A DNA stretch of 64,000 nucleotides from positions 124,001-188,000 of IMG/VR virus record IMGVR_UViG_3300045999_008996. One strand, given 5' to 3'. Below the pieces are notes generated by a model. That model worked only from the letters and a program-made list of their open reading frames with translations, ran no database searches and was not told the DNA's origin. The position numbers were made by a program, and so were the translations under genes. The first letter of the stretch is position 1, and every line of letters starts with the position of its first letter. This document shows positions 5,236 through 61,318 of the stretch, piece after piece.

Positions 5236-5307
5236 AGCCCCCGACAAGATTTGAACTTGCGACATCGGCTTTACAAAAGCCGCGCTCTACCACTGAGCTA
5301 CAAGGGC
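5236..5307 (-). tRNA. trnT: tRNA-Thr(UGU)
   Basis: Cloverleaf GCCCTTG..CGGGGGC, anticodon loop TT-TGT-AA, T loop GTTCAAAT. Confidence 0.95.
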
Positions 5308-5308
5308 A

Positions 5309-5578
5309 TTAATCAACAGGTAACATTTCTGGATTTTCCAGTTCCAAATCATATAAGAGTGGATGACATTCTTCAAGCATTAAGTAGTATGATGCCTGAT
5401 AAAGGTCTTCTGGTTCAAAACGTCTTTCGTTATCTGCTAATTTGATCAGTTCCAAATCAAATAAAGATTCTTTTGGAAGATCGTCAAAAGTAAAAGGAAT
5501 TTGGTTTATGAAATACAGAAGGACAATTTCAGTTCCGCGATTATACCAAACGTATCTGGCATCTATTCTGTATTTCAT
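5309..5578 (-). CDS. Hypothetical cyanophage protein
   Basis: 89-aa ORF with GGA-containing RBS. Confidence 0.65.
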   Translation of the reverse strand: MKYRIDARYVWYNRGTEIVLLYFINQIPFTFDDLPKESLFDLELIKLADNERRFEPEDLYQASYYLMLEECHPLLYDLELENPEMLPVD

Positions 5579-5620
5579 AGAATAGTCCTTTACTTTTGTT
5601 TATTTAGAGGTAGAACCTCA

Positions 5621-5693
5621 TACCCGTGGCCAGATTCGAACTGGCACTGGAAGCATTTTAAGTGCTCTGTCTCTGCCGTTGGACTACACGGGC
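5621..5693 (-). tRNA. trnL: tRNA-Leu(UAA), short variable loop (73 nt)
   Basis: GCCCGTG..CACGGGT-A, anticodon arm GAGCA-CTTAAAA-TGCTT, 5-nt variable region. Confidence 0.9.
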
Positions 5694-5700
5694 AAAAAAC

Positions 5701-35295: not shown

Positions 35296-35431
35296 GTTTT
35301 TAATTCTTGCTCGTCTTTTAACTCATGATTGGATAATGCTTGAGAATAGAAGACCTATTCCTAAAAGACAACCACCAGAAATAATTCGTTTTATTCGTAG
35401 ACCTGCTAAAAGAGGTAGAAAACTAAAATGA
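35276..35431 (+). CDS. Small basic protein (51 aa)
   Basis: MKAIIVEFLILARLL..RRPAKRGRKLK; coupled to the next gene. Confidence 0.45.
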   Translation: MKAIIVEFLILARLLTHDWIMLENRRPIPKRQPPEIIRFIRRPAKRGRKLK

Positions 35432-35688
35432 AAAATATCAGTTCATTCACAGCAATTAGGTTAATAATTCTTGGATGGTCTGCTACTTTATTGACACTAA
35501 ACTATATGGATTACTTAAAAAAAATGGATGCTACTTTCATAGCATCCGTATTTACTTCTGCACTAGCAACTTTTGGAGTTGATGCAGCTAACAAAAAATC
35601 AAAGACCAGCCTTGATAAATCTGTAGATTGTGATGCCTGCAGATCCAAGAGTAGCAAAGAGAGCACCCAAACTACTGAAGAAACCTGA
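35428..35688 (+). CDS. Two-helix membrane protein (holin candidate)
   Basis: Two hydrophobic segments and a charged C-tail; converges on the lysozyme operon. Confidence 0.5.
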   Translation: MKNISSFTAIRLIILGWSATLLTLNYMDYLKKMDATFIASVFTSALATFGVDAANKKSKTSLDKSVDCDACRSKSSKESTQTTEET

Positions 35689-36378
35689 TATCTTTTCTTC
35701 CAAAGGTTTTCTTTCTACGTGAAATAACTCTCTATTATCATATATCCATTGCCACATAGATATTCTCATATCTTCTGGAACTAATGGATCAATCCAGGAA
35801 CTAATTTCACTTTCTCTATCTCCAACAAGGATTCCGCTTTTATTGTAAGTGCGTATTCTTGTAATATTGTATTCACCAGTATAATCTACTTGTTTGTCAG
35901 CAATTTCATCAGCAACCTAAAAGTCAATATCTGCTTGAACACGCTCATAATGAGTTTTCATAAAAGTAACATCCAATTCAACATCACCGTTTTCTGGTCT
36001 ATAAGGATGTGAAACACCATTCACACAAACTTCAAGTGTTCCTGGATGTAGTTTATTTTGAGTTGGGAATACTTGGCAGATTAATGGTTTAGGAATCAAC
36101 CAGGATGTTTTCGTTAAAGCAAAGTATGGAATTCCAATAGAGAGAGTAATTGGTATTCCAAAAGCAAGTATTCTTTTTCGGTGACTGTTAATTATCGTCT
36201 GGGCAGCTTCACCAAGATCTTTTGTTCTAGCAGCGTGGATTACCAAAAGATTACGAAACGATTGTAGTCTTTTACGAAATCCAAGTTCATATTGCGATTC
36301 TTCAGCAACAAGTATCATATTATCCAGCTTCTGTAACAAGACCACATGATCTGTGTTGTTACATTGCTCGGCGGGCAT
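35599..36378 (-). pseudogene. 259-codon membrane-protein gene interrupted by one in-frame TAG at 35917-35919 (nonsense allele or readthrough)
   Basis: After ..QADIDF-TAG the same frame stays open for 105 codons (VADEIADKQVDY..LGSAGITIYRFIKAGL-TGA) and has no start codon near the TAG. Confidence 0.7.
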
Positions 36379-36422: not shown

Positions 36423-36881
36423 TTATGAAAACCAAAGTTTACCTTCTGCAACTCTTCTTCTCTTCAATCCCGCTTCCACACTTGTTCCTGGGTTATGATA
36501 AAGATATAAAGCATCAGGTACCTTAGTCCATTCTTTATTTTTAAGAACTCTGGTTATGGTATTAAAATTGGAAGACCCGTAAAAACCAGCACCAAGATTA
36601 TAAGCAAAAGAAAGAAGTGCTCCTTTTTGATTTTCATTCATTTCACTCCAGTAAGGTATTCTTTGTAGTGATGGCAAAAATCTATTCTTTAAATCAAATT
36701 CAAGTAGAGTGTCTGCATACTTTTGAGTAATCACTCTACCTATTTTGAAGGGTGTCCCATCAAAGTCTTTAGTGCTTCCCCAACCAATTGTAATCGGCGG
36801 TCCTTTTGTTAAAGGATCTGGATAAGCATTTAAATGACATCCTTCAAACTCTTTGATTAAATTAATGCCAACCAACGGCAC
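36423..36881 (-). CDS. GH24 phage lysozyme domain (GTG start; probably reached by -1 frameshift from the upstream gene)
   Basis: IKEFEG..AY.D..TIGWGST..ALLSFAYNLG..GL.RRR..E. Confidence 0.9.
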   Translation of the reverse strand: MPLVGINLIKEFEGCHLNAYPDPLTKGPPITIGWGSTKDFDGTPFKIGRVITQKYADTLLEFDLKNRFLPSLQRIPYWSEMNENQKGALLSFAYNLGAGFYGSSNFNTITRVLKNKEWTKVPDALYLYHNPGTSVEAGLKRRRVAEGKLWFS

Positions 36882-36923
36882 TTCATTGGCATTATTAATG
36901 TTAGTTGGCGCTTCTACTTTTTT
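36867..36923 (-). promoter_or_regulatory. -1 programmed ribosomal frameshift signal
   Basis: A AAA AAG (36923-36917) directly before TAG, 7-nt spacer, 10-bp stem GCCAACTAAC/GTTGGTTGGC; the -1 frame is the lysozyme frame. Confidence 0.8.
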
Positions 36924-37609
36924 GCATCAAAAATACGACCCCAACCAGTCTTATCTCTTCCTTTTTCTAACCAACGATAAGTAAGGTCTGACTTTTTATA
37001 GACTGAACCTTTACCATTCGTAACTGGTCCAGTGTAACCATCGTTTAGAGAACCATAAGGATCGTTAACAACGTAGTCCTCACCTTTCTTTCCAATCACT
37101 ACAACCATGTGCCCGCCAGTAGGATTAGATAAAGAGCCGCGGTGCAGGATACCAATAACGACAGGTCTCCCAGCAGATAACTCACGATCAAGATCAACAA
37201 ACCCAAGATTGTAACTAAAGCGTGACTTAATTCCATAATTTTCCAGAACTTTTGTCTGGACGGTGTGATCAGTTGAATCACCAATCGCAAAAACTTTTTG
37301 GACATAGGCATCATCGCCTTTTGCTCCTTGAAGCGTACCTGGTTTGAAATACTCTAGGCACATCGCACAAGCAGATGAGTTGCAAGTTCTTTGTGCATCT
37401 CTATAATTATCTGTTTGTGGATAAAAAGGAACAGGAAGAACTCCAGGAACAGTTGGTTTTGTTCTATAAATTCTAACCCAATTAGAAGTGTCTTCAAGCA
37501 AATCTGGGTTCTTACTTACAAGATCAACCTCAAATTGTTCTACAGCAGCAACATGCTTTGGATTGTTCTCATCATAATGTTTAAAAAAGTTATGAAGATC
37601 TACTCTCAT
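36914..37609 (-). CDS. Peptidase C39-like protein (putative endolysin N-terminal part)
   Basis: VPFYPQ..TCNSSACAM (Cys), GGHMVVVIG (His), VNDPYG (Asp); late promoter AATAAATA upstream. Confidence 0.85.
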   Translation of the reverse strand: MRVDLHNFFKHYDENNPKHVAAVEQFEVDLVSKNPDLLEDTSNWVRIYRTKPTVPGVLPVPFYPQTDNYRDAQRTCNSSACAMCLEYFKPGTLQGAKGDDAYVQKVFAIGDSTDHTVQTKVLENYGIKSRFSYNLGFVDLDRELSAGRPVVIGILHRGSLSNPTGGHMVVVIGKKGEDYVVNDPYGSLNDGYTGPVTNGKGSVYKKSDLTYRWLEKGRDKTGWGRIFDAKK

Positions 37610-37640
37610 TGTCTCTATTAATTAGATATTTTATTTATTA

Positions 37641-37664
37641 AAAAAGCGTCCTTTCGGACGCTTT
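37641..37664 (-). terminator. Terminator after peroxiredoxin
   Basis: AAGCGTCC-GAAA-GGACGCTT-TTTT. Confidence 0.8.
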
Positions 37665-55886: not shown

Positions 55887-55939
55887 TGTTTTGAATGTTG
55901 ACCTTAGTATTATAAGGGTTTGACAGGTAATCTGTCAAG

Positions 55940-56012
55940 TGCTCCTTGCGTGGATCGAACACGCCTCAGGCGAATTATGAGTTCGCTGCATTCACCAGAT
56001 TGCTAAAGGAGC
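55940..56012 (-). tRNA. trnI: tRNA(CAU), probably Ile2 (lysidine type)
   Basis: Anticodon arm GCGAA-CTCATAA-TTCGC resembles the cyanobacterial Ile2 arm and lacks the fMet GGG/CCC pairs. Confidence 0.8.
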
Positions 56013-56016
56013 AAGG

Positions 56017-56104
56017 TACGAGTGGGTGGATTCGAACCACCTCAAAGCCGCTAATCTGGCGGAAAGGCGTTATAAGTGCCCTCTGACTACCAAGTCTCAC
56101 TCGC
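56017..56104 (-). tRNA. trnI: Atypical tRNA-Ile(UAU) with long variable arm and 4-nt D loop
   Basis: GCGAGTG/CACTCGT acceptor, loop CT-TAT-AA, extra CCGC/GCGG arm, GGTGG-TTCGAAT-CCACC. Confidence 0.7.
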
Positions 56105-56142
56105 TTGAACCAGGTCTATTATAGAGGACCTGGAACTCTATG

Positions 56143-56373
56143 TCAAGAACCTTCTTCGTGGTCAGTGTGTATTCGTATCATATCATCATCCACTTTAGAT
56201 TCTACTGCAAACTTTATAGTTTCGTTATATGGAACAATCACTGCGTTTCTTTCTCCATCAGTAATAATAAATGATTCGCCGTTCTCTACTCTTTGTATTA
56301 GATTGTCAAAATCTACTTGAAACTCTTGAACTGTAAATTTTTGGAGATCTGAAAGTTCTGGATACATTTTCAT
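56143..56373 (-). CDS. Orphan Phd/YefM-fold antitoxin-like protein
   Basis: FTVQEFQVDFDNLIQRVENGESFIITDGERNAVIVPY follows the Phd pattern VE.GE...IT....AVIV. Confidence 0.55.
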   Translation of the reverse strand: MKMYPELSDLQKFTVQEFQVDFDNLIQRVENGESFIITDGERNAVIVPYNETIKFAVESKVDDDMIRIHTDHEEGS

Positions 56374-56389
56374 AAAGTGAAGTTTATGA

Positions 56390-56461
56390 TCGGGGTGAGA
56401 GGGATCGAACCTCTGTCTTCTTGCTCCCAAAGCAAGCCGTCTACCGCTGACTTACACCCCG
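56390..56461 (-). tRNA. trnP: tRNA-Pro(UGG)
   Basis: CGGGGTG..CACCCCG-A; TT-TGG-GA. Confidence 0.95.
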
Positions 56462-56578
56462 TTATTTGTTTCTGTGTATAAACATAATACCAGCAAATGG
56501 TACGATTGTCAACCCACATCCACAAAGAAAAAGAAAGAAGGGACTTGCTGCTAATGTTTCAACAAGATGAAAAATCAT
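56462..56578 (-). CDS. Small membrane protein (38 aa)
   Basis: MIFHLVETLAASPFFLFLCGCGLTIVPFAGIMFIHRNK. Confidence 0.5.
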   Translation of the reverse strand: MIFHLVETLAASPFFLFLCGCGLTIVPFAGIMFIHRNK

Positions 56579-56802
56579 CTTCCCCTCCAGTTCTTGTATT
56601 CATAATACATGTATTGGTCGGTTTCGTCAAGCCCCTGTAAAGGAGCATGAACGTCCCAGTGTGACCATTCAATACAGAACTGTTTAATATGTATATCATT
56701 AACAGCAGTCTTTACTCCATACATTCTAGAAAATGAAGACATTGCAAAATGATATTTTTGTCTAATGTGCGGTTCCATTTCCCTTATATTCTTTGGAGTC
56801 AT
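56575..56802 (-). CDS. Hypothetical protein
   Basis: 75-aa ORF with GAGGAGG RBS. Confidence 0.65.
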   Translation of the reverse strand: MTPKNIREMEPHIRQKYHFAMSSFSRMYGVKTAVNDIHIKQFCIEWSHWDVHAPLQGLDETDQYMYYEYKNWRGR

Positions 56803-56870
56803 AGTATCCTCCTCTTGTTCCGAAATAGAGTGTTGTTAAAACAAACGGAATAGAAATGAAAATAAGTGCT

Positions 56871-57893
56871 TTACCTAACATGATGTCCCCCAAACATATA
56901 ACGCATTCCGTTTAGGATTTTTGCTCCGAATGATCCGAGATTGCGTGAGTTAAATCTTTCAAATAGTGCTGTAGTAATAACAGGAGCGGGAACCCCCAGG
57001 TCCACAGCGGCAGAAACAGTCCAACGACCCTCACCACTATCGGATACTCCTCCAGAGAACTGTTTAAGGCTACCATCCCGGCGTAACACATCAGCAGTAA
57101 GATCAAGTAACCAAGACCCAACCACGCTACCGCGACGCCATAACTCAGCAACCTCAGCAACATCAATATCATAACAATAGGATTCGGGGTCTGCCATAGG
57201 GGCGACTTCTGCATCTCCTTCTCTAACATATTTGGCACCCACATTAGCGTTCTTCAGAATGTTGAAACCTTCTGCATATGCTTGCATTATTCCATACTCA
57301 ATACCGTTGTGAACCATCTTCACAAAATGTCCTGCACCTGGACCACCACAATGCAACCAACCAAACTCAGCAGAAGTTACATCCGAGTCATACTGAGTCC
57401 TGGGGGCAGCGTTGATTCCTGGAGCGAGGGCATCAAAAATGCTTGCACAAGTGGCGACCGCAGTATTTCCGCCACCAACCATAAGACAGTATCCACGATC
57501 CAAACCATAAACACCGCCGCTAGTACCACAATCAATATATTGGATACCAAGTTTTGCAAGACGCTCTGCTCTCTTCCGACTGTCTTTAAAATTGCTATTG
57601 CCATGATCAATAATAATATCTCCCTCACCACAATATCGTAGTAACTCATTGATTGTTTCCTCTACAGTTTCTGCTGGCACAACCATTTGAAATATTCCTG
57701 GATTGCCATTACCTTTTACTACTTGAACAAGGCTTTGTATAGTAGTCGTAACACCATTAACATATCCGTTTTCATATGCTTCTTGAGCCTTTTCATAGTT
57801 CCTTCGGTAACCCCAAACCTCAATACCCGCTTTCATCATGCGGCGAGACATTCCTTCACCCATTCTTCCCAAACCAATTAATCCTACTTTCAT
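56871..57893 (-). CDS. gnd: 6-phosphogluconate dehydrogenase (decarboxylating, short type)
   Basis: GLIGLGRMG, IDHGNS, DCGTSGG, GHFVKMVHNGIEYG, DSGEGRW, FGGH. Confidence 0.96.
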   Translation of the reverse strand: MKVGLIGLGRMGEGMSRRMMKAGIEVWGYRRNYEKAQEAYENGYVNGVTTTIQSLVQVVKGNGNPGIFQMVVPAETVEETINELLRYCGEGDIIIDHGNSNFKDSRKRAERLAKLGIQYIDCGTSGGVYGLDRGYCLMVGGGNTAVATCASIFDALAPGINAAPRTQYDSDVTSAEFGWLHCGGPGAGHFVKMVHNGIEYGIMQAYAEGFNILKNANVGAKYVREGDAEVAPMADPESYCYDIDVAEVAELWRRGSVVGSWLLDLTADVLRRDGSLKQFSGGVSDSGEGRWTVSAAVDLGVPAPVITTALFERFNSRNLGSFGAKILNGMRYMFGGHHVR

Positions 57894-57985
57894 AAAACCT
57901 CCGGATATGCGTGTGTAAGTCCCCAATGTATAAAAAGTCCAATAGACGAAAAAAGAAGAATTGTAGATATTATTGTTTTAATCAT
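57890..57985 (-). CDS. Small membrane peptide (31 aa)
   Basis: MIKTIISTILLFSSIGLFIHWGLTHAYPEVL, ATGA-coupled to gnd. Confidence 0.5.
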   Translation of the reverse strand: MIKTIISTILLFSSIGLFIHWGLTHAYPEVL

Positions 57986-58091
57986 CTTCTTCATCTTCGT
58001 AAGCAGATGGTTCTTCAAAGAGTTCTTCCATTTTTTGTTGAAGAACTCTTTTGTTTAGTTTTTGCAAATCTTCTTCTGTGATTGTTACCAT
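57978..58091 (-). CDS. Small acidic protein (37 aa)
   Basis: MVTITEEDLQKLNKRVLQQKMEELFEEPSAYEDEEDD. Confidence 0.55.
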   Translation of the reverse strand: MVTITEEDLQKLNKRVLQQKMEELFEEPSAYEDEEDD

Positions 58092-58294
58092 TAGTTTAAA
58101 GTAATTTTAAGAAATGGAAGTAACGGGGGAATAACTCCAACTAATCTCAAAAGTCCCTCAGCAAATAAAGCAAGAACCACCCAACCGACGCACATACTAA
58201 TGATAGAAGCATTACGGTTGTGTCTTCGGATAGCAGCATCAATCATCTCCTGAACTTCAGAACGTGTGATAAATTCTTCTTGTTCGTGCATCAT
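58091..58294 (-). CDS. Small membrane protein
   Basis: QEMIDAAIRRHNRNASIIS + TM helix. Confidence 0.65.
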   Translation of the reverse strand: MMHEQEEFITRSEVQEMIDAAIRRHNRNASIISMCVGWVVLALFAEGLLRLVGVIPPLLPFLKITLN

Positions 58295-58440
58295 TTTTCA
58301 TCGCCAAGAAATTTTGCAAGAGGGTCTCTTCGGGTTTTTACGATTTCAACTGCTCTTTTGTAGAACATATTATCCATGTTCCCAGAAGATTCAAAAGTTG
58401 CTTTGATCTTCACCCAATTATCGTAGGTGTGTTGATCCAT
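58291..58440 (-). CDS. Small protein (49 aa)
   Basis: MDQHTYDNWVKIKATFESSGNMDNMFYKRAVEIVKTRRDPL.. Confidence 0.6.
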   Translation of the reverse strand: MDQHTYDNWVKIKATFESSGNMDNMFYKRAVEIVKTRRDPLAKFLGDEK

Positions 58441-58555
58441 CGGTTCGTCCCCGTGATACTACTATATACTAATCACAGGTATTTCGATGTCAACTTTTTG
58501 TGTTCATATCGTAACACTGTTGAAAAAATTATTAAATTTGTAACTATTCTTAAAA

Positions 58556-58641
58556 CGGAAGCGGTAGGATTTGAACCCACGAACGCTATTAACGTTGGTT
58601 GTTTTCAAGACAACTGCCATAAACCACTCGGCCACGCTTCC
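58556..58641 (-). tRNA. trnS: tRNA-Ser(UGA)
   Basis: GGAAGCG..CGCTTCC-G; CT-TGA-AA; long variable arm. Confidence 0.95.
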
Positions 58642-58651
58642 AGTAGAAGGT

Positions 58652-58903
58652 TCAACGAACCTCAAAATCCAATCGTTTTACTTTACGTTGGCGTCTTGCT
58701 TCTTGAAAAGCAAGATCTTGCGAAGAAAGAACATTTGATTTTTGTTCTTTCTGGATAGAGTTTAACATAACAATGCGAGATAAGTCAAGTGCTGATATCT
58801 TATCTCCACGAATTGTTGCCATATTAGGACAACCACAGGTCACCGTTTTTGAATGATGTCCTGTTATTTCCTTATTACAATCTTTGCATCTTATTGAAAT
58901 CAT
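58652..58903 (-). CDS. Putative Zn-binding hypothetical protein
   Basis: CKDC..CGCPN. Confidence 0.65.
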   Translation of the reverse strand: MISIRCKDCNKEITGHHSKTVTCGCPNMATIRGDKISALDLSRIVMLNSIQKEQKSNVLSSQDLAFQEARRQRKVKRLDFEVR

Positions 58904-58918
58904 GATTCTTCATCCTAT

Positions 58919-59353
58919 TCATTGCAGGTGTGCTCTTAACTGCCAAACAAACTTACCATGAGATTCCATTAAATCTTGAACTAAATTTGCTGTAGCATAT
59001 GACTTTTGATTTTCAGATTCTTCCGAAATCTCTACCATTAAATCACAAAACTTGGTATTGTTATCAAGAAGCTCTTGAAGCATTTCTTTTGCTCCAGTTG
59101 AACTTGCTGCCTCTTTGATTTGAGTTACCTCAAGCATTCTAGAAAGAGAACTGAGAGGTTTTACATTCAAATAACGCATATGTTCCGAAAGACGATCAAT
59201 CTCTTCAAACATAGTTTCATACTGACCGCCAAAGAGTTGATGAAGTTGAGTGAAGTCTTCACCTACAACATTCCAATGAAATGCCCAAGTTTTATGGAAT
59301 AAAACAAAAAGCGATGACTGTGCATCACTCAAGAGTTTATAAAGTTTTTCCAT
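58919..59353 (-). CDS. dps: Dps ferritin-like DNA-protecting protein
   Basis: HWNVVG.DF..LH..F..QY..E.ID..SE..K..W.L; start re-assigned to MEKLY (track extension overlaps tRNAs). Confidence 0.9.
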   Translation of the reverse strand: MEKLYKLLSDAQSSLFVLFHKTWAFHWNVVGEDFTQLHQLFGGQYETMFEEIDRLSEHMRYLNVKPLSSLSRMLEVTQIKEAASSTGAKEMLQELLDNNTKFCDLMVEISEESENQKSYATANLVQDLMESHGKFVWQLRAHLQ

Positions 59354-59381
59354 TATACTCTTTTTATTTTTATTTATCAAG

Positions 59382-59454
59382 TGGGCAAAGAGGGATTCGA
59401 ACCCCCGACATCCTCCGTGTAAAGGAGACGCTACTACCGCTGAGCTATTTGCCC
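59382..59454 (-). tRNA. trnV: tRNA-Val(UAC)
   Basis: GGGCAAA..TTTGCCC-A; TT-TAC-AC. Confidence 0.95.
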
Positions 59455-59529
59455 TGGCTCCACAACCTGGATTCGAACCAGGGACCAAGTGATTAACAGT
59501 CACCGACTCTACCGCTGAGCTATTGTGGA
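59455..59529 (-). tRNA. trnN: tRNA-Asn(GUU), CCA encoded
   Basis: TCCACAA..TTGTGGA-G-CCA; CT-GTT-AA. Confidence 0.95.
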
Positions 59530-59533
59530 ATGA

Positions 59534-59603
59534 AGGAAGTTACTGGACTTACACCAGTTACGAGGGCATTGTCTGCTTGTCTTGATTCTTTGACTTAACT
59601 TCC
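59534..59603 (-). ncRNA. tRNA-like RNA with collapsed anticodon arm
   Basis: Perfect 7-bp acceptor GGAAGTT/AACTTCC, 5-bp T stem ACTGG/CCAGT with TGTAAGT loop, 3-bp D stem; no canonical anticodon stem. Confidence 0.55.
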
Positions 59604-59643
59604 TTTGGCGTCTTTCTATGCTATCTGCATAACGACTACCAAG

Positions 59644-59715
59644 AGCGAAAGACGAGATTCGAACTCGCAACAACCTGCTTGGAAGGCAGGGACTCTACCG
59701 TTGAGTTACTTTCGC
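59644..59715 (-). tRNA. trnG: tRNA-Gly(UCC)
   Basis: GCGAAAG..CTTTCGC-T; CT-TCC-AA. Confidence 0.95.
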
Positions 59716-59754
59716 AATGAGACAATCATAAACTATTTTAGTTTGATTGTCAAG

Positions 59755-59836
59755 TGTCGATGAGAGGACTTGAACCTCCACAGATTAATCTACTGGAACC
59801 TAAACCCAGCGCGTCTACCAATTCCGCCACATCGAC
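59755..59836 (-). tRNA. trnL: tRNA-Leu(UAG)
   Basis: GTCGATG..CATCGAC-A; TT-TAG-GT; variable arm present. Confidence 0.95.
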
Positions 59837-59930
59837 TTGATGGAGTAAGTATGATATACCTCATAAGGATATAACAGTGACTTACCCTCTATCATTTTAT
59901 ATATTAACAGACTCAAAAGAATCTGTCAAG

Positions 59931-60003
59931 CGTCCTTTGAGAGATTCGAACTCCCGCACATAGGTTCGTAGCCTACTGCTCTATTCCACTGAGCTAAAAG
60001 GAC
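59931..60003 (-). tRNA. trnR: tRNA-Arg(ACG)
   Basis: GTCCTTT..AAAGGAC-G; CT-ACG-AA. Confidence 0.95.
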
Positions 60004-60006
60004 AAG

Positions 60007-60078
60007 TTCTGAGGGTAGGATTCGAACCCACGAATGGCGGGACCAAAACCCGCTGCCTTACCGCTTGGCGACCTCAGA
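60007..60078 (-). tRNA. trnQ: tRNA-Gln(UUG)
   Basis: TCTGAGG..CCTCAGA-A; TT-TTG-GT. Confidence 0.95.
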
Positions 60079-60150
60079 AGCCCTCAATTGGATTTGAACC
60101 AACGACCTACTCATTACTAGTGAGTTGCTCTACCACTGAGCTATAAGGGC
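60079..60150 (-). tRNA. trnT: tRNA-Thr(AGU)
   Basis: GCCCTTA..TGAGGGC-T; ACTCA-CT-AGT-AA-TGAGT. Confidence 0.9.
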
Positions 60151-60152
60151 GG

Positions 60153-60223
60153 GGTGCCGTGAGGGAATCGAACCCTCATATAGAGAACCACAATCTCCTG
60201 TCTTACCATTAGACTAACGACAC
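60153..60223 (-). tRNA. trnH: tRNA-His(GUG)
   Basis: GTGTCGT..ACGGCAC-C; TT-GTG-GT. Confidence 0.9.
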
Positions 60224-60224
60224 A

Positions 60225-60298
60225 AGGCAGTAGATAGATTTGAACTATCGACCATAGGCATATGAGACCCGTGCTCTGCCAGACTGAGCTATACTGCC
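60225..60298 (-). tRNA. trnM: tRNA-Met(CAU), elongator type, weak anticodon stem
   Basis: GGCAGTA..TACTGCC-T; CT-CAT-AT. Confidence 0.8.
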
Positions 60299-60300
60299 AA

Positions 60301-60389
60301 CGGAAGTGGTTGGATTCGAACCAACGGATGCCTATAAAGACATCGGCGGATTAGCAATCCACTGCATTAGACCTCTCTGCCACACTTCC
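60301..60389 (-). tRNA. trnS: tRNA-Ser(GCU)
   Basis: GGAAGTG..CACTTCC-G; TT-GCT-AA; long arm. Confidence 0.95.
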
Positions 60390-60391
60390 AA

Positions 60392-60465
60392 TAGGAATGG
60401 TGAGATTCGAACTCACGACCACACGATTATCAGTCGTGTACTCTAACCAACTGAGCTACATTCCT
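60392..60465 (-). tRNA. trnI: tRNA-Ile(GAU)
   Basis: AGGAATG..CATTCCT-A; CT-GAT-AA. Confidence 0.95.
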
Positions 60466-60466
60466 G

Positions 60467-60541
60467 TGGTATTCCTAACGGGATTCGAACCCGTGCTGCC
60501 ACCTTGAAAGGGTGGTGACCTAACCGCTAGTCGATAGGAAC
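60467..60541 (-). tRNA. trnE: tRNA-Glu(UUC), CCA encoded
   Basis: GTTCCTA..TAGGAAT-A-CCA; CT-TTC-AA. Confidence 0.95.
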
Positions 60542-60589
60542 TTAATGCTGACGGCATTCTGGATTATCAGCTCCAGCGCAAATCAGCAA

Positions 60590-60661
60590 CGACTCTAACG
60601 GGATTTGAACCCGTGATACTACCGTGACAGGGTAGCGTGATAACCGCTTCACTATAGAGTC
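60590..60661 (-). tRNA. trnD: tRNA-Asp(GUC)
   Basis: GACTCTA..TAGAGTC-G; CT-GTC-AC. Confidence 0.95.
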
Positions 60662-60665
60662 AAGG

Positions 60666-60747
60666 TGGGAGGAGCAGGATTCGAACCTGCGAAGGTAGAA
60701 CCGTCTGATTTACAGTCAGATTCCTTTAGCCACTCGGAAATCCTCCC
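60666..60747 (-). tRNA. trnY: tRNA-Tyr(GUA)
   Basis: GGGAGGA..TCCTCCC-A; CT-GTA-AA; variable arm. Confidence 0.95.
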
Positions 60748-60750
60748 AGA

Positions 60751-60823
60751 TGGGTATGGTCGGGTTCGAACCGACGACTTACAGGTTAAAAGCCCGCTAC
60801 TCTACCAACTGAGTTACATACCC
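60751..60823 (-). tRNA. trnK: tRNA-Lys(UUU)
   Basis: GGGTATG..CATACCC-A; CT-TTT-AA. Confidence 0.95.
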
Positions 60824-60939
60824 TTAGAATTAAATTGTCAAGGTTCGGGGTGTGGTCTCTCTCGACCACTTGATTAGAATACCACCTTTTGGACTCTGGG
60901 GGGAGATTGGTGGACACTTAGGAAACTGGTCCAAGCAAC

Positions 60940-60977
60940 AAAAAAGGGGAGGAAACTTTTGGTTTCTCTCCCCTCTA
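60940..60977 (-). terminator. Terminator downstream of tRNA-Arg(UCU) and the long hairpin
   Basis: GGGGAGAGAAACC..TTTCCTCCCC followed by T5. Confidence 0.6.
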
Positions 60978-61004
60978 TTTGCTTTTATGGATTGCATATT
61001 ACAT

Positions 61005-61100
61005 ATGTCTTTCCATTTCAGCAAACAGGGGATTACCCTCAATATGCCAATCACGGCAATCGAGAGTACTAATCTGTTTGGTGGTGATTTGGAAAGACAT
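61005..61100 (-). ncRNA. Candidate rod-shaped ncRNA (~96 nt)
   Basis: Nested inverted repeats ATGTCTTTCCA/TGGAAAGACAT, CAAACAG/CTGTTTG, ATTA/TAAT, CTC/GAG, TGCC/GGCA. Confidence 0.5.
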
Positions 61101-61152
61101 TGTTTTCGACCTAAGTGTTTTTATTTATAAGACTTTTATTTAAAAAGTCTAA

Positions 61153-61226
61153 CGGGTTAGGAGGGACTCGAACCCCCGACCAATTCATTAGAAGTGAATT
61201 GCTCTATCCATCTGAGCTACTAACCC
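61153..61226 (-). tRNA. trnR: tRNA-Arg(UCU)
   Basis: GGGTTAG..CTAACCC-G; CT-TCT-AA. Confidence 0.95.
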
Positions 61227-61318
61227 AAGAGACCTCTCTGTTTGTGCTTCTATGAGAGGCATGAGAGGGGTGAGACTTATATGAGGTTTGGACCCTCACT
61301 GCTCATATGATTATTGTA

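What the first reader, a model, noticed from the sequence alone, without database searches (positions are those of the whole stretch)
36423..37609. Programmed -1 frameshift endolysin: C39-like peptidase switched to a peptidase-lysozyme fusion
Seen: the peptidase ORF ends GAT GCA AAA AAG TAG, placing the A_AAA_AAG heptamer (36923-36917) directly before its stop. A 7-nt spacer precedes a 10-bp stem GCCAACTAAC/GTTGGTTGGC (36909-36867), whose loop AATGCCAA can alternatively pair with downstream TTGGCATT. An SD-like GGGGT lies 14 nt upstream. The -1 frame reads KK-VEAPTNINNANE-VPLVGINLIKEFEG.., a linker running into the GH24 lysozyme, which otherwise has only a GTG start without an RBS. Known: A_AAA_AAG + upstream SD + downstream stem is the dnaX/IS3-family -1 signal and is favoured by tRNA-Lys(UUU), which this phage encodes at 60751. 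Inference: one late gene yields a 231-aa peptidase and a ~395-aa peptidase-muramidase at a fixed ratio, so muramidase output is recoding-controlled. I am not aware of this being described for cyanophage lysis genes.
Basis: partly seen in the sequence, partly recalled or inferred. Interest (0 to 1): 0.92.

Follow-up and report, generated by a model that had tools for sequence, protein, structure and literature searches.

The report
Frameshift-made two-enzyme cyanophage endolysin
A cyanophage cell-wall peptidase gene ends in a conserved ribosome "slip" signal that most likely lets some ribosomes read on into the next, startless lysozyme gene; this gives one short and one double-enzyme lysis protein, is shared by more than 100 related phages including the model phage S-PM2, and appears undescribed.

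Summary

The 231-aa C39-like peptidase ORF (37609-36914, minus strand) ends GCA AAA AAG TAG. A GH24 lysozyme lies in the -1 frame, which opens only 10 nt before that stop.

Among 158 related loci with both genes adjacent:
- 127 have in-frame A_AAA_AAG in the same short overlap.
- 3 (S-CAM7 lineage) have T_TTT_TTT there instead.
- 70 of the 127 have no ATG/GTG/TTG before the catalytic Glu.

The startless lysozyme ORFs are intact and under purifying selection (dN/dS 0.19). Lys-Lys is AAA AAG in 86 of 86 distinct contexts, and the preceding codon always ends in A although it encodes five different amino acids.

A 9-14 bp hairpin follows the heptamer. Its sequence differs between about 23 lineages but stays complementary.

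Peptidases with no downstream lysozyme (0 of 24) and true in-frame fusions lack the heptamer. Natural in-frame fusions (ACG-2014f, phrog_3617) have the junction peptide predicted for the trans-frame product.

The mechanism is standard dnaX/IS3-type -1 frameshifting. The gene context, an endolysin gaining a second catalytic domain, was not found in the searchable literature. Frameshift efficiency, the upstream SD-like element and the role of the phage tRNA-Lys remain untested.

The parts
37640..37661 (-). Intrinsic terminator of the upstream peroxiredoxin gene (GCGUCC-GAAA-GGACGC followed by U6). It marks the start of a separate transcription unit for the peptidase-lysozyme pair.
   Evidence: Read directly. 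Fold -15.3 kcal/mol, z = -5.6. The consensus scan missed it. Upstream gene = phrog_2281 peroxiredoxin.
37632..37638 (-). ATAAATA motif 22 nt before the ATG; a possible T4-type late promoter (inference only).
   Evidence: Read directly. Resembles the T4 late promoter consensus TATAAATA (own knowledge). Not tested.
36914..37609 (-). 0-frame ORF of 231 aa: N-terminal ~50-aa helical module plus a papain-fold C39-like cysteine peptidase. This is the short product.
   Evidence: ORF. PF13529 5e-11. phrog_3617 profile positions 1-235 and phrog_10051. Gln/Cys/Cys/His/Asp invariant in all 52 aligned rows that cover those positions. Papain-fold PDB matches to the model of a homologue.
37454..37609 (-). 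N-terminal helical module (about residues 1-52) that is also found at the N-terminus of stand-alone lysozymes in related phages.
   Evidence: 48-56% identity, E about 1e-15, to the N-termini of the DSL-LC02 and DSL-LC03 lysozymes. Helices 17-50 at pLDDT 80-93 in the model. No Pfam family.
36938..36942 (-). SD-like GGGGT 14 nt upstream of the heptamer; a possible 5' stimulator, unresolved.
   Evidence: Read directly. It lies in the invariant W-G codons of the GWGR motif, so coding constraint explains its conservation.
36927..36929 (-). TGA that closes the -1 frame upstream. It limits the productive shift window to 13 nt.
   Evidence: Three-frame translation. The -1 frame opens 10 nt before the 0-frame stop here and in most relatives.
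36917..36923 (-). Slippery heptamer A_AAA_AAG in the 0 frame; the proposed site of tandem -1 slippage of two tRNA-Lys.
   Evidence: Conserved in 127 loci; Lys-Lys is AAA AAG in 86 of 86 distinct contexts; the preceding codon is GCA, GTA, ATA, ACA or GAA. Absent from peptidases without a downstream lysozyme.
36914..36916 (-). 0-frame stop codon TAG directly after the heptamer.
   Evidence: The stop directly follows the heptamer in 76 of 86 contexts and lies one codon later in 10.
36867..36909 (-). Stimulatory hairpin: 10-bp stem (36909-36900 with 36876-36867), 23-nt loop, 7 nt after the heptamer.
   Evidence: Centroid fold -13.7 kcal/mol, z = -1.97. In the window's stem family 90% of cells are paired against 12-48% when slid, with GC/AU/GU covariation. 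The second family and the arm-swap test agree.
36423..36917 (-). -1 frame coding sequence: linker (VEAPTNINNANEVPLVG) plus GH24 lysozyme, 164 codons and the stop. It is expressed as the C-terminal part of the 395-aa trans-frame product.
   Evidence: PF00959 6e-22. phrog_3617 positions 247-404. Catalytic Glu and Thr invariant and Asp nearly so (52 of 54 rows). dN/dS 0.19 in startless homologues. GH24 endolysin fold, TM up to 0.91.
60751..60823 (-). Phage tRNA-Lys(UUU); a possible modulator of slippage at AAG (speculative link).
   Evidence: ARAGORN. The dependence of dnaX slippage on tRNA-Lys(UUU)/AAG pairing is established knowledge (Tsuchihashi and Brown 1992, cited in PMC4066793). Not tested here.

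Best explanation
The peptidase and lysozyme ORFs form one recoded endolysin gene.

Most ribosomes translate the 0 frame and stop at TAG. This gives a 231-aa protein made of an N-terminal helical module and a papain-fold C39-like cysteine peptidase. A fraction of ribosomes pause with the two tRNA-Lys on A_AAA_AAG, held by the hairpin that starts 7 nt downstream. They slip back one base, with AAA AAG re-pairing as AAA AAA, and continue in the -1 frame. This gives a 395-aa protein in which the same N-module and peptidase are joined by a short linker to a GH24 muramidase.

Shown by comparison: the signal (heptamer in frame, minimal overlap, hairpin) is under selection at the nucleotide level. The lysozyme ORF is under purifying selection although it usually has no start codon. 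The fusion polypeptide exists as an ordinary ORF in sister lineages.

Inferred: the shift is ribosomal, both products act on peptidoglycan at lysis, and their ratio is set by the efficiency of the signal.
For: 1. Frame architecture. 130 of 158 loci with adjacent genes have the lysozyme in the -1 frame, a 10-34 nt overlap and an in-frame slippery heptamer. 127 have A_AAA_AAG and 3 have T_TTT_TTT.
2. No alternative start. 70 of the 127 have no ATG/GTG/TTG between the upstream -1 stop and the catalytic Glu. S-PM2 and S-CAM7 are among them, and their lysins are annotated only as 72-90 aa fragments.
3. The lysozyme is not a pseudogene. All 71 startless ORFs that could be checked are full length, with median dN/dS 0.19. 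The catalytic E-D-T motif is present in 45 of 49.
4. Synonymous-site selection. Lys-Lys is AAA AAG in 86 of 86 contexts, although Lys codons elsewhere in the same ORFs are 807 AAA to 538 AAG. The preceding codon always ends in A although it encodes Ala, Val, Ile, Thr or Glu.
5. Hairpin strength. The 77 distinct frameshift junctions have median dG -16.4 and z = -2.6, and the stem starts 0-8 nt after the heptamer in 74 of 77. True in-frame fusions have z near 0.
6. Hairpin covariation. One family is 98.5% paired against 30-48% when slid, with 4 doubly changed pairs and 0 of 500 shuffles as high. The window's family is 90% paired against 12-48%. Native arm pairs give -16.4 kcal/mol against -7.6 for arms swapped between about 23 arm families.
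7. Co-occurrence. 0 of 24 peptidases lacking a downstream lysozyme carry the heptamer. The 8 true in-frame fusion loci lack it at the equivalent position. A sub-lineage that acquired an ATGA or GTGA start shows a decaying heptamer and weak or absent hairpins.
8. The product exists. In-frame fusions L090-L098 and ACG-2014f read ..RIFDAKVEE.. and ..KFFATVEE.., colinear with the predicted ..RIFDAKKVEA.. (window) and ..RVFFSTVEP.. (S-CAM7). phrog_3617 is a 405-position profile that covers both domains.
9. Not a sequencing artefact. A6 is identical in two S-PM2 sequencing projects, and T8 is found in three S-CAM7 isolate records and two metagenome contigs.
Against: - There is no protein, ribosome-profiling or reporter evidence, so the efficiency is unknown and could be low.
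- The window itself has GTG (36881) and TTG (36875) in the lysozyme frame, so some independent initiation cannot be excluded for this particular phage.
- The window's hairpin alone is only modestly better than shuffles (z = -1.97) and competes with an alternative fold.
- The heptamer alone is at chance frequency in the window.
- Some lysozymes with their own ATG (group B) keep a weaker hairpin at the same linker, so the hairpin is not exclusive to frameshift junctions.
- Two contigs (L170, L192) have A7 and are in frame, which shows that the run length can vary.
- The host tRNA-Lys repertoire is unknown.
- The upstream SD-like element cannot be separated from coding constraint.
Confidence: 0.85

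Rival explanations
1. Transcriptional slippage. RNA polymerase adds one extra A in the A6 run (or one U in the T8 run of S-CAM7). A fraction of mRNAs are then in frame and encode the same fusion protein.
For: The protein product would be identical (AAA AAA GTA), so colinearity with in-frame fusions does not discriminate. The A7 variants L170 and L192 show the run can change length. Homopolymer A7 and U7 motifs are discussed as slippage-prone in PMC4066793. The S-CAM7 T8 run is closer to lengths known to slip (own knowledge).
Against: A6 is shorter than the runs of about 9 typically used for productive bacterial transcriptional slippage (own knowledge). The strictly conserved frame of the heptamer, the G at position 7 in 86 of 86 contexts, and a covarying hairpin 0-8 nt downstream are the hallmarks of ribosomal -1 frameshifting. 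A polymerase mechanism does not require them.
Confidence: 0.06
2. Two separate proteins only. The lysozyme is translated on its own from GTG 36881, TTG 36875 or a non-canonical codon, perhaps by termination-reinitiation after the peptidase stop. The heptamer and hairpin would be incidental.
For: The window has GTG and TTG in frame. Related sub-lineages do use ATGA or GTGA overlaps (S-SRM01, L146, L159, L174, L175, L180) or separate genes (DSL-LC02 and DSL-LC03, group B). Many cyanobacterial genes lack an SD sequence (own knowledge).
Against: 70 of 127 homologous junctions have no ATG/GTG/TTG at all before the catalytic Glu. The window's GTG is not conserved in its own stem family, and the TTG lies inside the 3' arm of the hairpin. 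This model does not explain synonymous-site conservation of the heptamer, the covarying hairpin, or the heptamer's absence from peptidases without a lysozyme. Stand-alone lysozymes in related phages mostly carry an extra N-terminal module that the startless ORFs lack.
Confidence: 0.05
3. Artefact or decay. The split is a homopolymer sequencing or assembly error in a simple fusion gene, or a frameshift mutation that has made the lysozyme a pseudogene.
For: Homopolymer runs are error-prone. Two related contigs have A7 and are in frame. In-frame fusions are common in a sister lineage.
Against: 127 independent contigs and isolates share A6 and the split frames. S-PM2 has it in both the original and the resequenced genome, and S-CAM7 has T8 in all isolates examined. 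The lysozyme ORFs are intact with dN/dS 0.19. The 0-frame stop directly after the heptamer and the hairpin are conserved, which an error model does not predict.
Confidence: 0.02

Closest known systems
E. coli dnaX -1 programmed frameshift (tau/gamma)
   Same: Identical heptamer A_AAA_AAG read by tRNA-Lys(UUU), and a downstream stem-loop at about 6-7 nt. Two products share an N-terminus.
   Different: In dnaX the shift leads almost at once to a stop and makes a shorter protein; here it adds a whole 164-aa catalytic domain. The dnaX upstream SD stimulator is proven, while here the GGGGT cannot be separated from coding constraint. No Rfam frameshift element matches.
IS3-family transposase orfA-orfB frameshift (IS911, IS150, IS3)
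   Same: A_AAA_AAG near the end of the upstream ORF, a short 0/-1 overlap and a downstream structure. The trans-frame fusion adds the catalytic domain, while the upstream-only product is also made.
   Different: The gene class differs (a lysis enzyme, not a transposase). The stimulator is a simple hairpin whose sequence and register differ between lineages, not a conserved pseudoknot.
Phage tail assembly chaperone frameshift (lambda G/GT and homologues)
   Same: A conserved -1 frameshift in a phage late gene that yields a short and a C-terminally extended protein in a set ratio.
   Different: The function is different and the slippery sequence is usually different. The extension here is an enzyme domain. 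A 2020 paper states that slippage has so far been reported mainly for tail genes (PMC7260188).
In-frame peptidase-GH24 fusion endolysins of cyanomyoviruses (ACG-2014f gp211; phrog_3617)
   Same: Same N-module, C39-like peptidase, linker and GH24 order, with a colinear junction peptide.
   Different: A single ordinary ORF with no heptamer at the junction and no significant hairpin (z near 0). Only the long form can be made.
Endolysins that make two isoforms from an internal start codon (e.g. Lys170, CD27L, CTP1L; own knowledge)
   Same: One lysin gene gives two polypeptides that share a part and may act together.
   Different: Those isoforms arise by internal initiation and share the C-terminus (the wall-binding domain). 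Here the isoforms would arise by recoding and share the N-terminus.

Membership tests
Programmed -1 ribosomal frameshift site (dnaX/IS3 type) | Slippery heptamer X_XXY_YYZ in the 0 frame, placed where the -1 frame is open | tested here: met
   A_AAA_AAG at 36923-36917. The -1 frame opens at 36926. The same holds in 127 loci, and 3 have T_TTT_TTT.
Programmed -1 ribosomal frameshift site (dnaX/IS3 type) | Downstream stimulatory RNA structure about 5-9 nt from the heptamer | tested here: met
   10-bp stem 7 nt downstream. 74 of 77 distinct junctions have a stem starting 0-8 nt downstream, median z = -2.6. Covariation and the arm-swap test agree.
Programmed -1 ribosomal frameshift site (dnaX/IS3 type) | Conservation of the signal beyond what the encoded protein requires | tested here: met
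   AAA AAG in 86 of 86 contexts against about 24% expected from Lys codon use. The preceding codon always ends in A across five amino acids.
Programmed -1 ribosomal frameshift site (dnaX/IS3 type) | The -1 frame ORF encodes a selected product that cannot be reached by ordinary initiation | tested here: met
   dN/dS 0.19 with intact ORFs. 70 of 127 junctions have no ATG/GTG/TTG before the catalytic Glu. For the window itself this is met only through its relatives, because GTG and TTG are present.
Programmed -1 ribosomal frameshift site (dnaX/IS3 type) | Upstream SD-like stimulator (specific to dnaX) | tested here: inconclusive
   GGGGT lies 14 nt upstream, but within invariant Trp-Gly codons.
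Programmed -1 ribosomal frameshift site (dnaX/IS3 type) | Trans-frame protein detected; efficiency depends on heptamer and structure | not testable with these tools
   Needs reporter assays, Western blots or mass spectrometry.
GH24 phage lysozyme (PF00959) | Family profile match and the catalytic Glu-Asp-Thr | tested here: met
   PF00959 6e-22, 78.8 bits against a cut-off of 22.3. Glu and Thr invariant, Asp in 52 of 54 rows. Fold matches P22 lysozyme and other GH24 endolysins, TM 0.8-0.9.
Peptidase_C39_2 / papain-fold cysteine peptidase (PF13529) | Family profile match above the curated cut-off; conserved Cys and His; papain-like fold | tested here: met
   43.7 bits against a cut-off of 24. 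Gln, two Cys, His and Asp are invariant in all 52 aligned rows covering those positions. Foldseek hits to a C39-like peptidase (3erv), the PCAT1 C39 domain and Alr0975 at E about 1e-3. The peptidoglycan substrate is inferred, not tested.

The most novel reading that the evidence does not exclude
The frameshift is not just a way to make two proteins. It would be a regulated stoichiometry device. The short and long forms would assemble through their shared N-terminal module into a mixed endolysin complex. Their ratio would be tuned during infection by the phage's own tRNA-Lys(UUU) supply relative to the host tRNA pool, coupling wall-degrading activity to the stage of infection.
Probability: 0.12. 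Interest if true: 0.8.

Novelty: new member of a known kind. Interest (0 to 1): 0.62.

Why it matters
- **Annotation.** The result corrects the lysis genes of a whole group of cyanomyoviruses. In the model phage S-PM2 and in S-CAM7 the lysin is recorded as a 72-90 aa fragment that lacks its catalytic Glu.
- **Recoding.** It adds a well-conserved case to the short list of bacterial and phage -1 frameshifts outside tail-chaperone, capsid, transposase and dnaX genes. Here the shift appends a second enzymatic activity to an endolysin.
- **Evolution of the signal.** The family shows every architecture side by side: in-frame fusion, reverse fusion, frameshift, coupled genes, separate genes and peptidase alone. 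This makes it a natural series for asking why a phage would choose recoding over fusion or separate genes, and for measuring how slippery site and hairpin co-evolve.
- **Testability.** S-PM2 with Synechococcus WH7803 is a tractable laboratory system, so the prediction can be tested directly.

Tried and rejected
- **S-CREM1 as the fused form.** I first took its 393-aa 'lysozyme' as the fused version of the frameshift product. Its domain order is reversed (lysozyme then peptidase), so it only shows that the two domains can share a polypeptide.
- **One consensus structure for all 77 junctions.** This failed because lineages pair the 5' arm with 3' arms offset by whole codons (column sums 96, 99 and 102 in A2). 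I used per-family counts and an arm-swap test instead.
- **Dinucleotide shuffle.** My script hung. The class-wide z-scores therefore use mononucleotide shuffles. The window's own z-score uses the tool's dinucleotide shuffles.
- **Consensus terminator scan.** It missed the clear terminator upstream of the gene, which I confirmed by folding.
- **PDB sequence search with the peptidase.** It gave only a borderline CcmK4 match (E = 0.017), treated as chance.
- **Rfam.** There were no frameshift-element hits.
- **Literature.** None described frameshifting in an endolysin or cyanophage gene. PRFect (PMC10885494) cites Shearman et al. [quoted passage not shown] That paper is not held, so I could not judge whether it is a precedent.
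- **Peptidase tree.** It shows at least 24 architecture changes but is too weakly supported to count independent origins.
Full report
**1. The observation**

On the minus strand the 231-aa ORF 37609-36914 ends GAT GCA AAA AAG TAG. The heptamer A_AAA_AAG occupies 36923-36917 and the stop 36916-36914. After a 7-nt spacer come the arms GCCAACTAAC (36909-36900) and GTTGGTTGGC (36876-36867).

The -1 frame is closed by TGA at 36929-36927. It then reads CKK-VEAPTN...LIKEFEG and stays open to 36423. Pfam assigns the 0-frame protein to Peptidase_C39_2 (5e-11) and the -1 frame protein to Phage_lysozyme, GH24 (6e-22). A -1 slip on the heptamer would give 231 + 164 = 395 aa. The tRNA-Lys(UUU) gene at 60751-60823 is real.

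The heptamer alone is at chance frequency in this A+T-rich window: 48 copies against 43 expected. So the single sequence is suggestive, not conclusive.

**2. Relatives**

The window is part of IMG/VR contig UViG_3300045999_008996 (222.6 kb), a Kyanoviridae-like cyanomyovirus. I collected 196 loci:
- isolates S-SRM01, S-PM2, S-CAM7, S-CREM1, DSL-LC02, DSL-LC03, S-SZBM1 and ACG-2014f;
- 185 IMG/VR contigs found with three peptidase queries.

The classification used the first 192 loci, and 158 of them have a lysozyme next to the peptidase:
- 127 loci (75 distinct junction strings) have in-frame A_AAA_AAG inside a 10-34 nt 0/-1 overlap, with the lysozyme in the -1 frame.
- 3 loci (S-CAM7 lineage) have T_TTT_TTT at the same place.
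- 1 locus has A_AAA_AAA with an ATGA start.
- 10 loci are in-frame fusions.
- 15 loci have a -1 overlap without a heptamer. Fourteen are group B, where an ATGA start opens a lysozyme carrying its own ~50-aa N-terminal extension; the fifteenth is L180.
- 2 loci (DSL-LC02 and DSL-LC03) have well-separated genes.
- In addition, 24 peptidases have no lysozyme within about 1-2 kb downstream, and S-CREM1 has a fusion in the reverse order.

**3. The lysozyme usually cannot start on its own, yet it is a live gene**

In 70 of the 127 A_AAA_AAG loci there is no ATG, GTG or TTG between the upstream -1 frame stop and the catalytic Glu. S-PM2 and S-CAM7 are examples. Their GenBank records annotate only a 72-90 aa 'lysin' that begins downstream of the catalytic Glu.

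All 71 startless lysozyme ORFs that could be checked run full length. Their median pairwise dN/dS is 0.19. The catalytic Glu and Thr are invariant and the Asp nearly so (52 of 54 rows). A gene under purifying selection without a start codon must be reached by recoding.

In the window itself GTG (36881) and TTG (36875) exist but have no SD. The GTG is not conserved within the window's own stem family, and the TTG lies in the 3' arm of the hairpin.

**4. The slippery site is selected at the nucleotide level**

In 86 distinct sequence contexts the two Lys codons are AAA AAG every time. Lys codons elsewhere in the same ORFs are 807 AAA to 538 AAG, so about 24% would be expected by chance. The preceding codon is GCA (45), GTA (38), ATA, ACA or GAA: five amino acids, always ending in A. 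The 0-frame stop follows directly in 76 contexts and after one codon in 10.

The heptamer is tied to the split architecture:
- None of the 24 peptidases without a downstream lysozyme has it. They end ..GRIFDVK*, ..GRVFQTP* and similar.
- The true in-frame fusions read GCG AAA GTC, GCT AAG GTA and similar at the equivalent position.
- In a short-linker sub-lineage that acquired an ATGA or GTGA start, the heptamer is decaying (GCA GCA AAG in L180, A7-T in L159) and the hairpin is weak or absent.

**5. The hairpin**

The 77 distinct frameshift junctions fold with median dG -16.4 kcal/mol and z = -2.6. The stem starts 0-8 nt after the heptamer in 74 of them. True in-frame fusions give z near 0.

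The stems differ between lineages, for example GCCAACTAAC/GTTGGTTGGC, AGTTCTACTCC/GGAGTAGAACT, CAACACCAC/GTGGTGTTG, CCCACTAC/GTAGTGGG, and GTAGAACCACCTAA/TTAGGGGTTCTAC in S-CAM7. The 3' arm sits on lysozyme N-terminal codons in registers offset by whole codons.

Three tests support selection for pairing:
- **Equal-length family of 19 sequences.** 98.5% of cells are paired against 30-48% when partners are slid. Four pairs carry changes on both sides, and 0 of 500 shuffles reach the observed values.
- **The window's own stem family of 19 sequences.** 90% of cells are paired against 12-48% when slid, with GC/AU/GU alternation. The covariation score is reached by 5 of 500 shuffles.
- **Arm swap across families.** Each 5' arm pairs with its own 3' arm at a median -16.4 kcal/mol, against -7.6 for 3' arms from other families. 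There are about 23 arm families.

One caveat: some group B lysozymes with their own ATG keep a weaker hairpin in the homologous linker (median z = -1.1).

**6. The fusion protein is real elsewhere**

ACG-2014f (about 45 isolate genomes) and contigs L090-L098 encode a single ~400-aa ORF. Its junction (..GWGRIFDAKVEEKK....GWGRKFFATVEE..) is colinear with the predicted trans-frame junctions of the window (..GWGRIFDAKKVEAP..) and of S-CAM7 (..GWGRVFFSTVEPP..). PHROG 3617 is a 405-position profile; the window's peptidase matches positions 1-235 and its lysozyme positions 247-404.

Two contigs (L170, L192) carry A7 in place of A6 and are in frame, with the hairpin intact. They show that the predicted product is a viable ORF, and also that the run length can change.

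Sequencing error is not a general explanation. A6 is identical in the original and the resequenced S-PM2 genomes, and T8 is found in three S-CAM7 isolate records and two metagenome contigs.

**7. The proteins**

An AlphaFold2 model of the natural in-frame fusion L091 has mean pLDDT 85. It shows:
- a helical N-terminal module (helices between residues 17 and 50);
- a low-confidence linker;
- a papain-fold domain, with Foldseek hits to a C39-like peptidase (3erv), the PCAT1 C39 domain and Alr0975 at E about 1e-3;
- a GH24 domain, matching P22 lysozyme and Acinetobacter and E. coli phage endolysins with TM 0.8-0.9.

Gln, two Cys, His and Asp of the peptidase are invariant.

The N-terminal module recurs at the N-terminus of the stand-alone lysozymes of DSL-LC02 and DSL-LC03 (48-56% identity, E about 1e-15). 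Group B lysozymes have a different ~50-aa extension. The startless lysozymes lack any such module and would obtain it only through fusion. This is indirect support that the long form is the functional muramidase. The role of the module is unknown. That the peptidase cuts peptidoglycan is inferred from context.

**8. Mechanism and rivals**

The best explanation is dnaX/IS3-type tandem -1 slippage of two tRNA-Lys on A_AAA_AAG, stimulated by the downstream hairpin. It would give a short peptidase and a long peptidase-muramidase (confidence about 0.85).
- **Transcriptional slippage** would give the same protein. It does not need a frame-locked heptamer, a conserved G at position 7 or a covarying hairpin, and A6 is short for it. 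It could contribute at the S-CAM7 T8 run.
- **Independent initiation** cannot be excluded for the window alone, but it fails for the 70 startless relatives.
- **Artefact or pseudogene** models are contradicted by replication across contigs and by dN/dS.

Not resolved: the efficiency; the role of the GGGGT 14 nt upstream, which lies in invariant Trp-Gly codons; and the role of the phage tRNA-Lys(UUU), which is plausible from dnaX work cited in PMC4066793 but untested.

The gene pair follows a strong terminator (37661-37640; -15.3 kcal/mol, z = -5.6) and an ATAAATA motif. This fits a separate late transcript but is not proof of one.

**9. Novelty**

The mechanism is a known kind. I found no description of frameshift expression of an endolysin or of any cyanophage gene in eight full-text searches and four papers read. 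The 2016 recoding review (PMC5009743, first 300,000 characters) mentions only the MS2 lysis gene. A 2020 paper on a Lactobacillus phage considered slippage between two lysin ORFs but found no slippery site, and noted that slippage is reported mainly for tail genes (PMC7260188). No GenBank record examined annotates a join here. One possible precedent cited by PRFect (Shearman et al. 1994) could not be read.

I rate this a new member of a known kind. It is well supported, widespread and directly testable in S-PM2.

Noticed in passing
window 37454-37609 (-); L003:2620-2790; L005:2276-2450: A ~50-aa helical N-terminal module with no Pfam family is shared by the peptidase and by stand-alone lysozymes of DSL-LC02 and DSL-LC03 (48-56% identity). 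Group B lysozymes (L072-L087) carry a different N-terminal extension of similar length. Its function (targeting, oligomerisation or regulation) is unknown.
   Followed up: partly
L002:2454-2672 (S-PM2 p157); L006:2256-2528 (S-CAM7); L194-L196: Public annotations of the S-PM2 and S-CAM7 'lysin' are 72-90 aa fragments that start downstream of the catalytic Glu. The full lysozyme domain is reachable only from the peptidase ORF by a -1 shift.
   Followed up: yes
window 37640-37661 (-): There is a strong intrinsic terminator (6-bp G+C-rich core extended by A-U pairs, followed by U6; -15.3 kcal/mol, z = -5.6) between the peroxiredoxin gene and the peptidase gene. The consensus terminator scan did not report it. 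An ATAAATA motif (37638-37632) follows it.
   Followed up: partly
window 55939-61227 and 5236-5694 (-): The window holds 21 tRNA genes, 19 of them in one array. They include tRNA-Lys(UUU) but not tRNA-Lys(CUU).
   Followed up: partly
L170 and L192 junctions: Two metagenomic contigs have A7 in place of A6. This makes an in-frame fusion while keeping the hairpin. They are either recent fusion mutants or population or assembly variants.
   Followed up: partly
L004:1471-2652 (S-CREM1); phrog_10051: A reverse-order fusion (GH24 lysozyme at the N-terminus, C39-like peptidase at the C-terminus) exists in S-CREM1 and forms its own PHROG. The two domains have therefore been joined in both orders.
   Followed up: partly
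window 37352-37495 (-), peptidase residues 39-86: This segment shows borderline sequence similarity (E = 0.017) to the C-terminal part of the carboxysome shell protein CcmK4 (PDB 2a10). It is probably chance.
   Followed up: no
L072-L087 (group B), linker before GVxLIK: Lysozymes with their own ATG still show a weaker hairpin (CCAACAC.../...GGTGTTG) in a VEPT... linker like that of the frameshift type. This may be a relic of a frameshift-type ancestor.
   Followed up: no
L121, L126, L134-L137, L143, L154-L168, L178, downstream of peptidase-only genes: A TATAAATA motif (the T4 late promoter consensus) lies just after the stop codon of peptidases that lack a downstream lysozyme.
   Followed up: no
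window 35428-35688 (+) and 35917-36378 (-): These are small ORFs next to the lysozyme. The + strand ORF matches PHROGs of unknown function and has two hydrophobic stretches. The 153-aa minus-strand ORF has no family hit. Neither could be assigned as a holin or spanin.
   Followed up: partly
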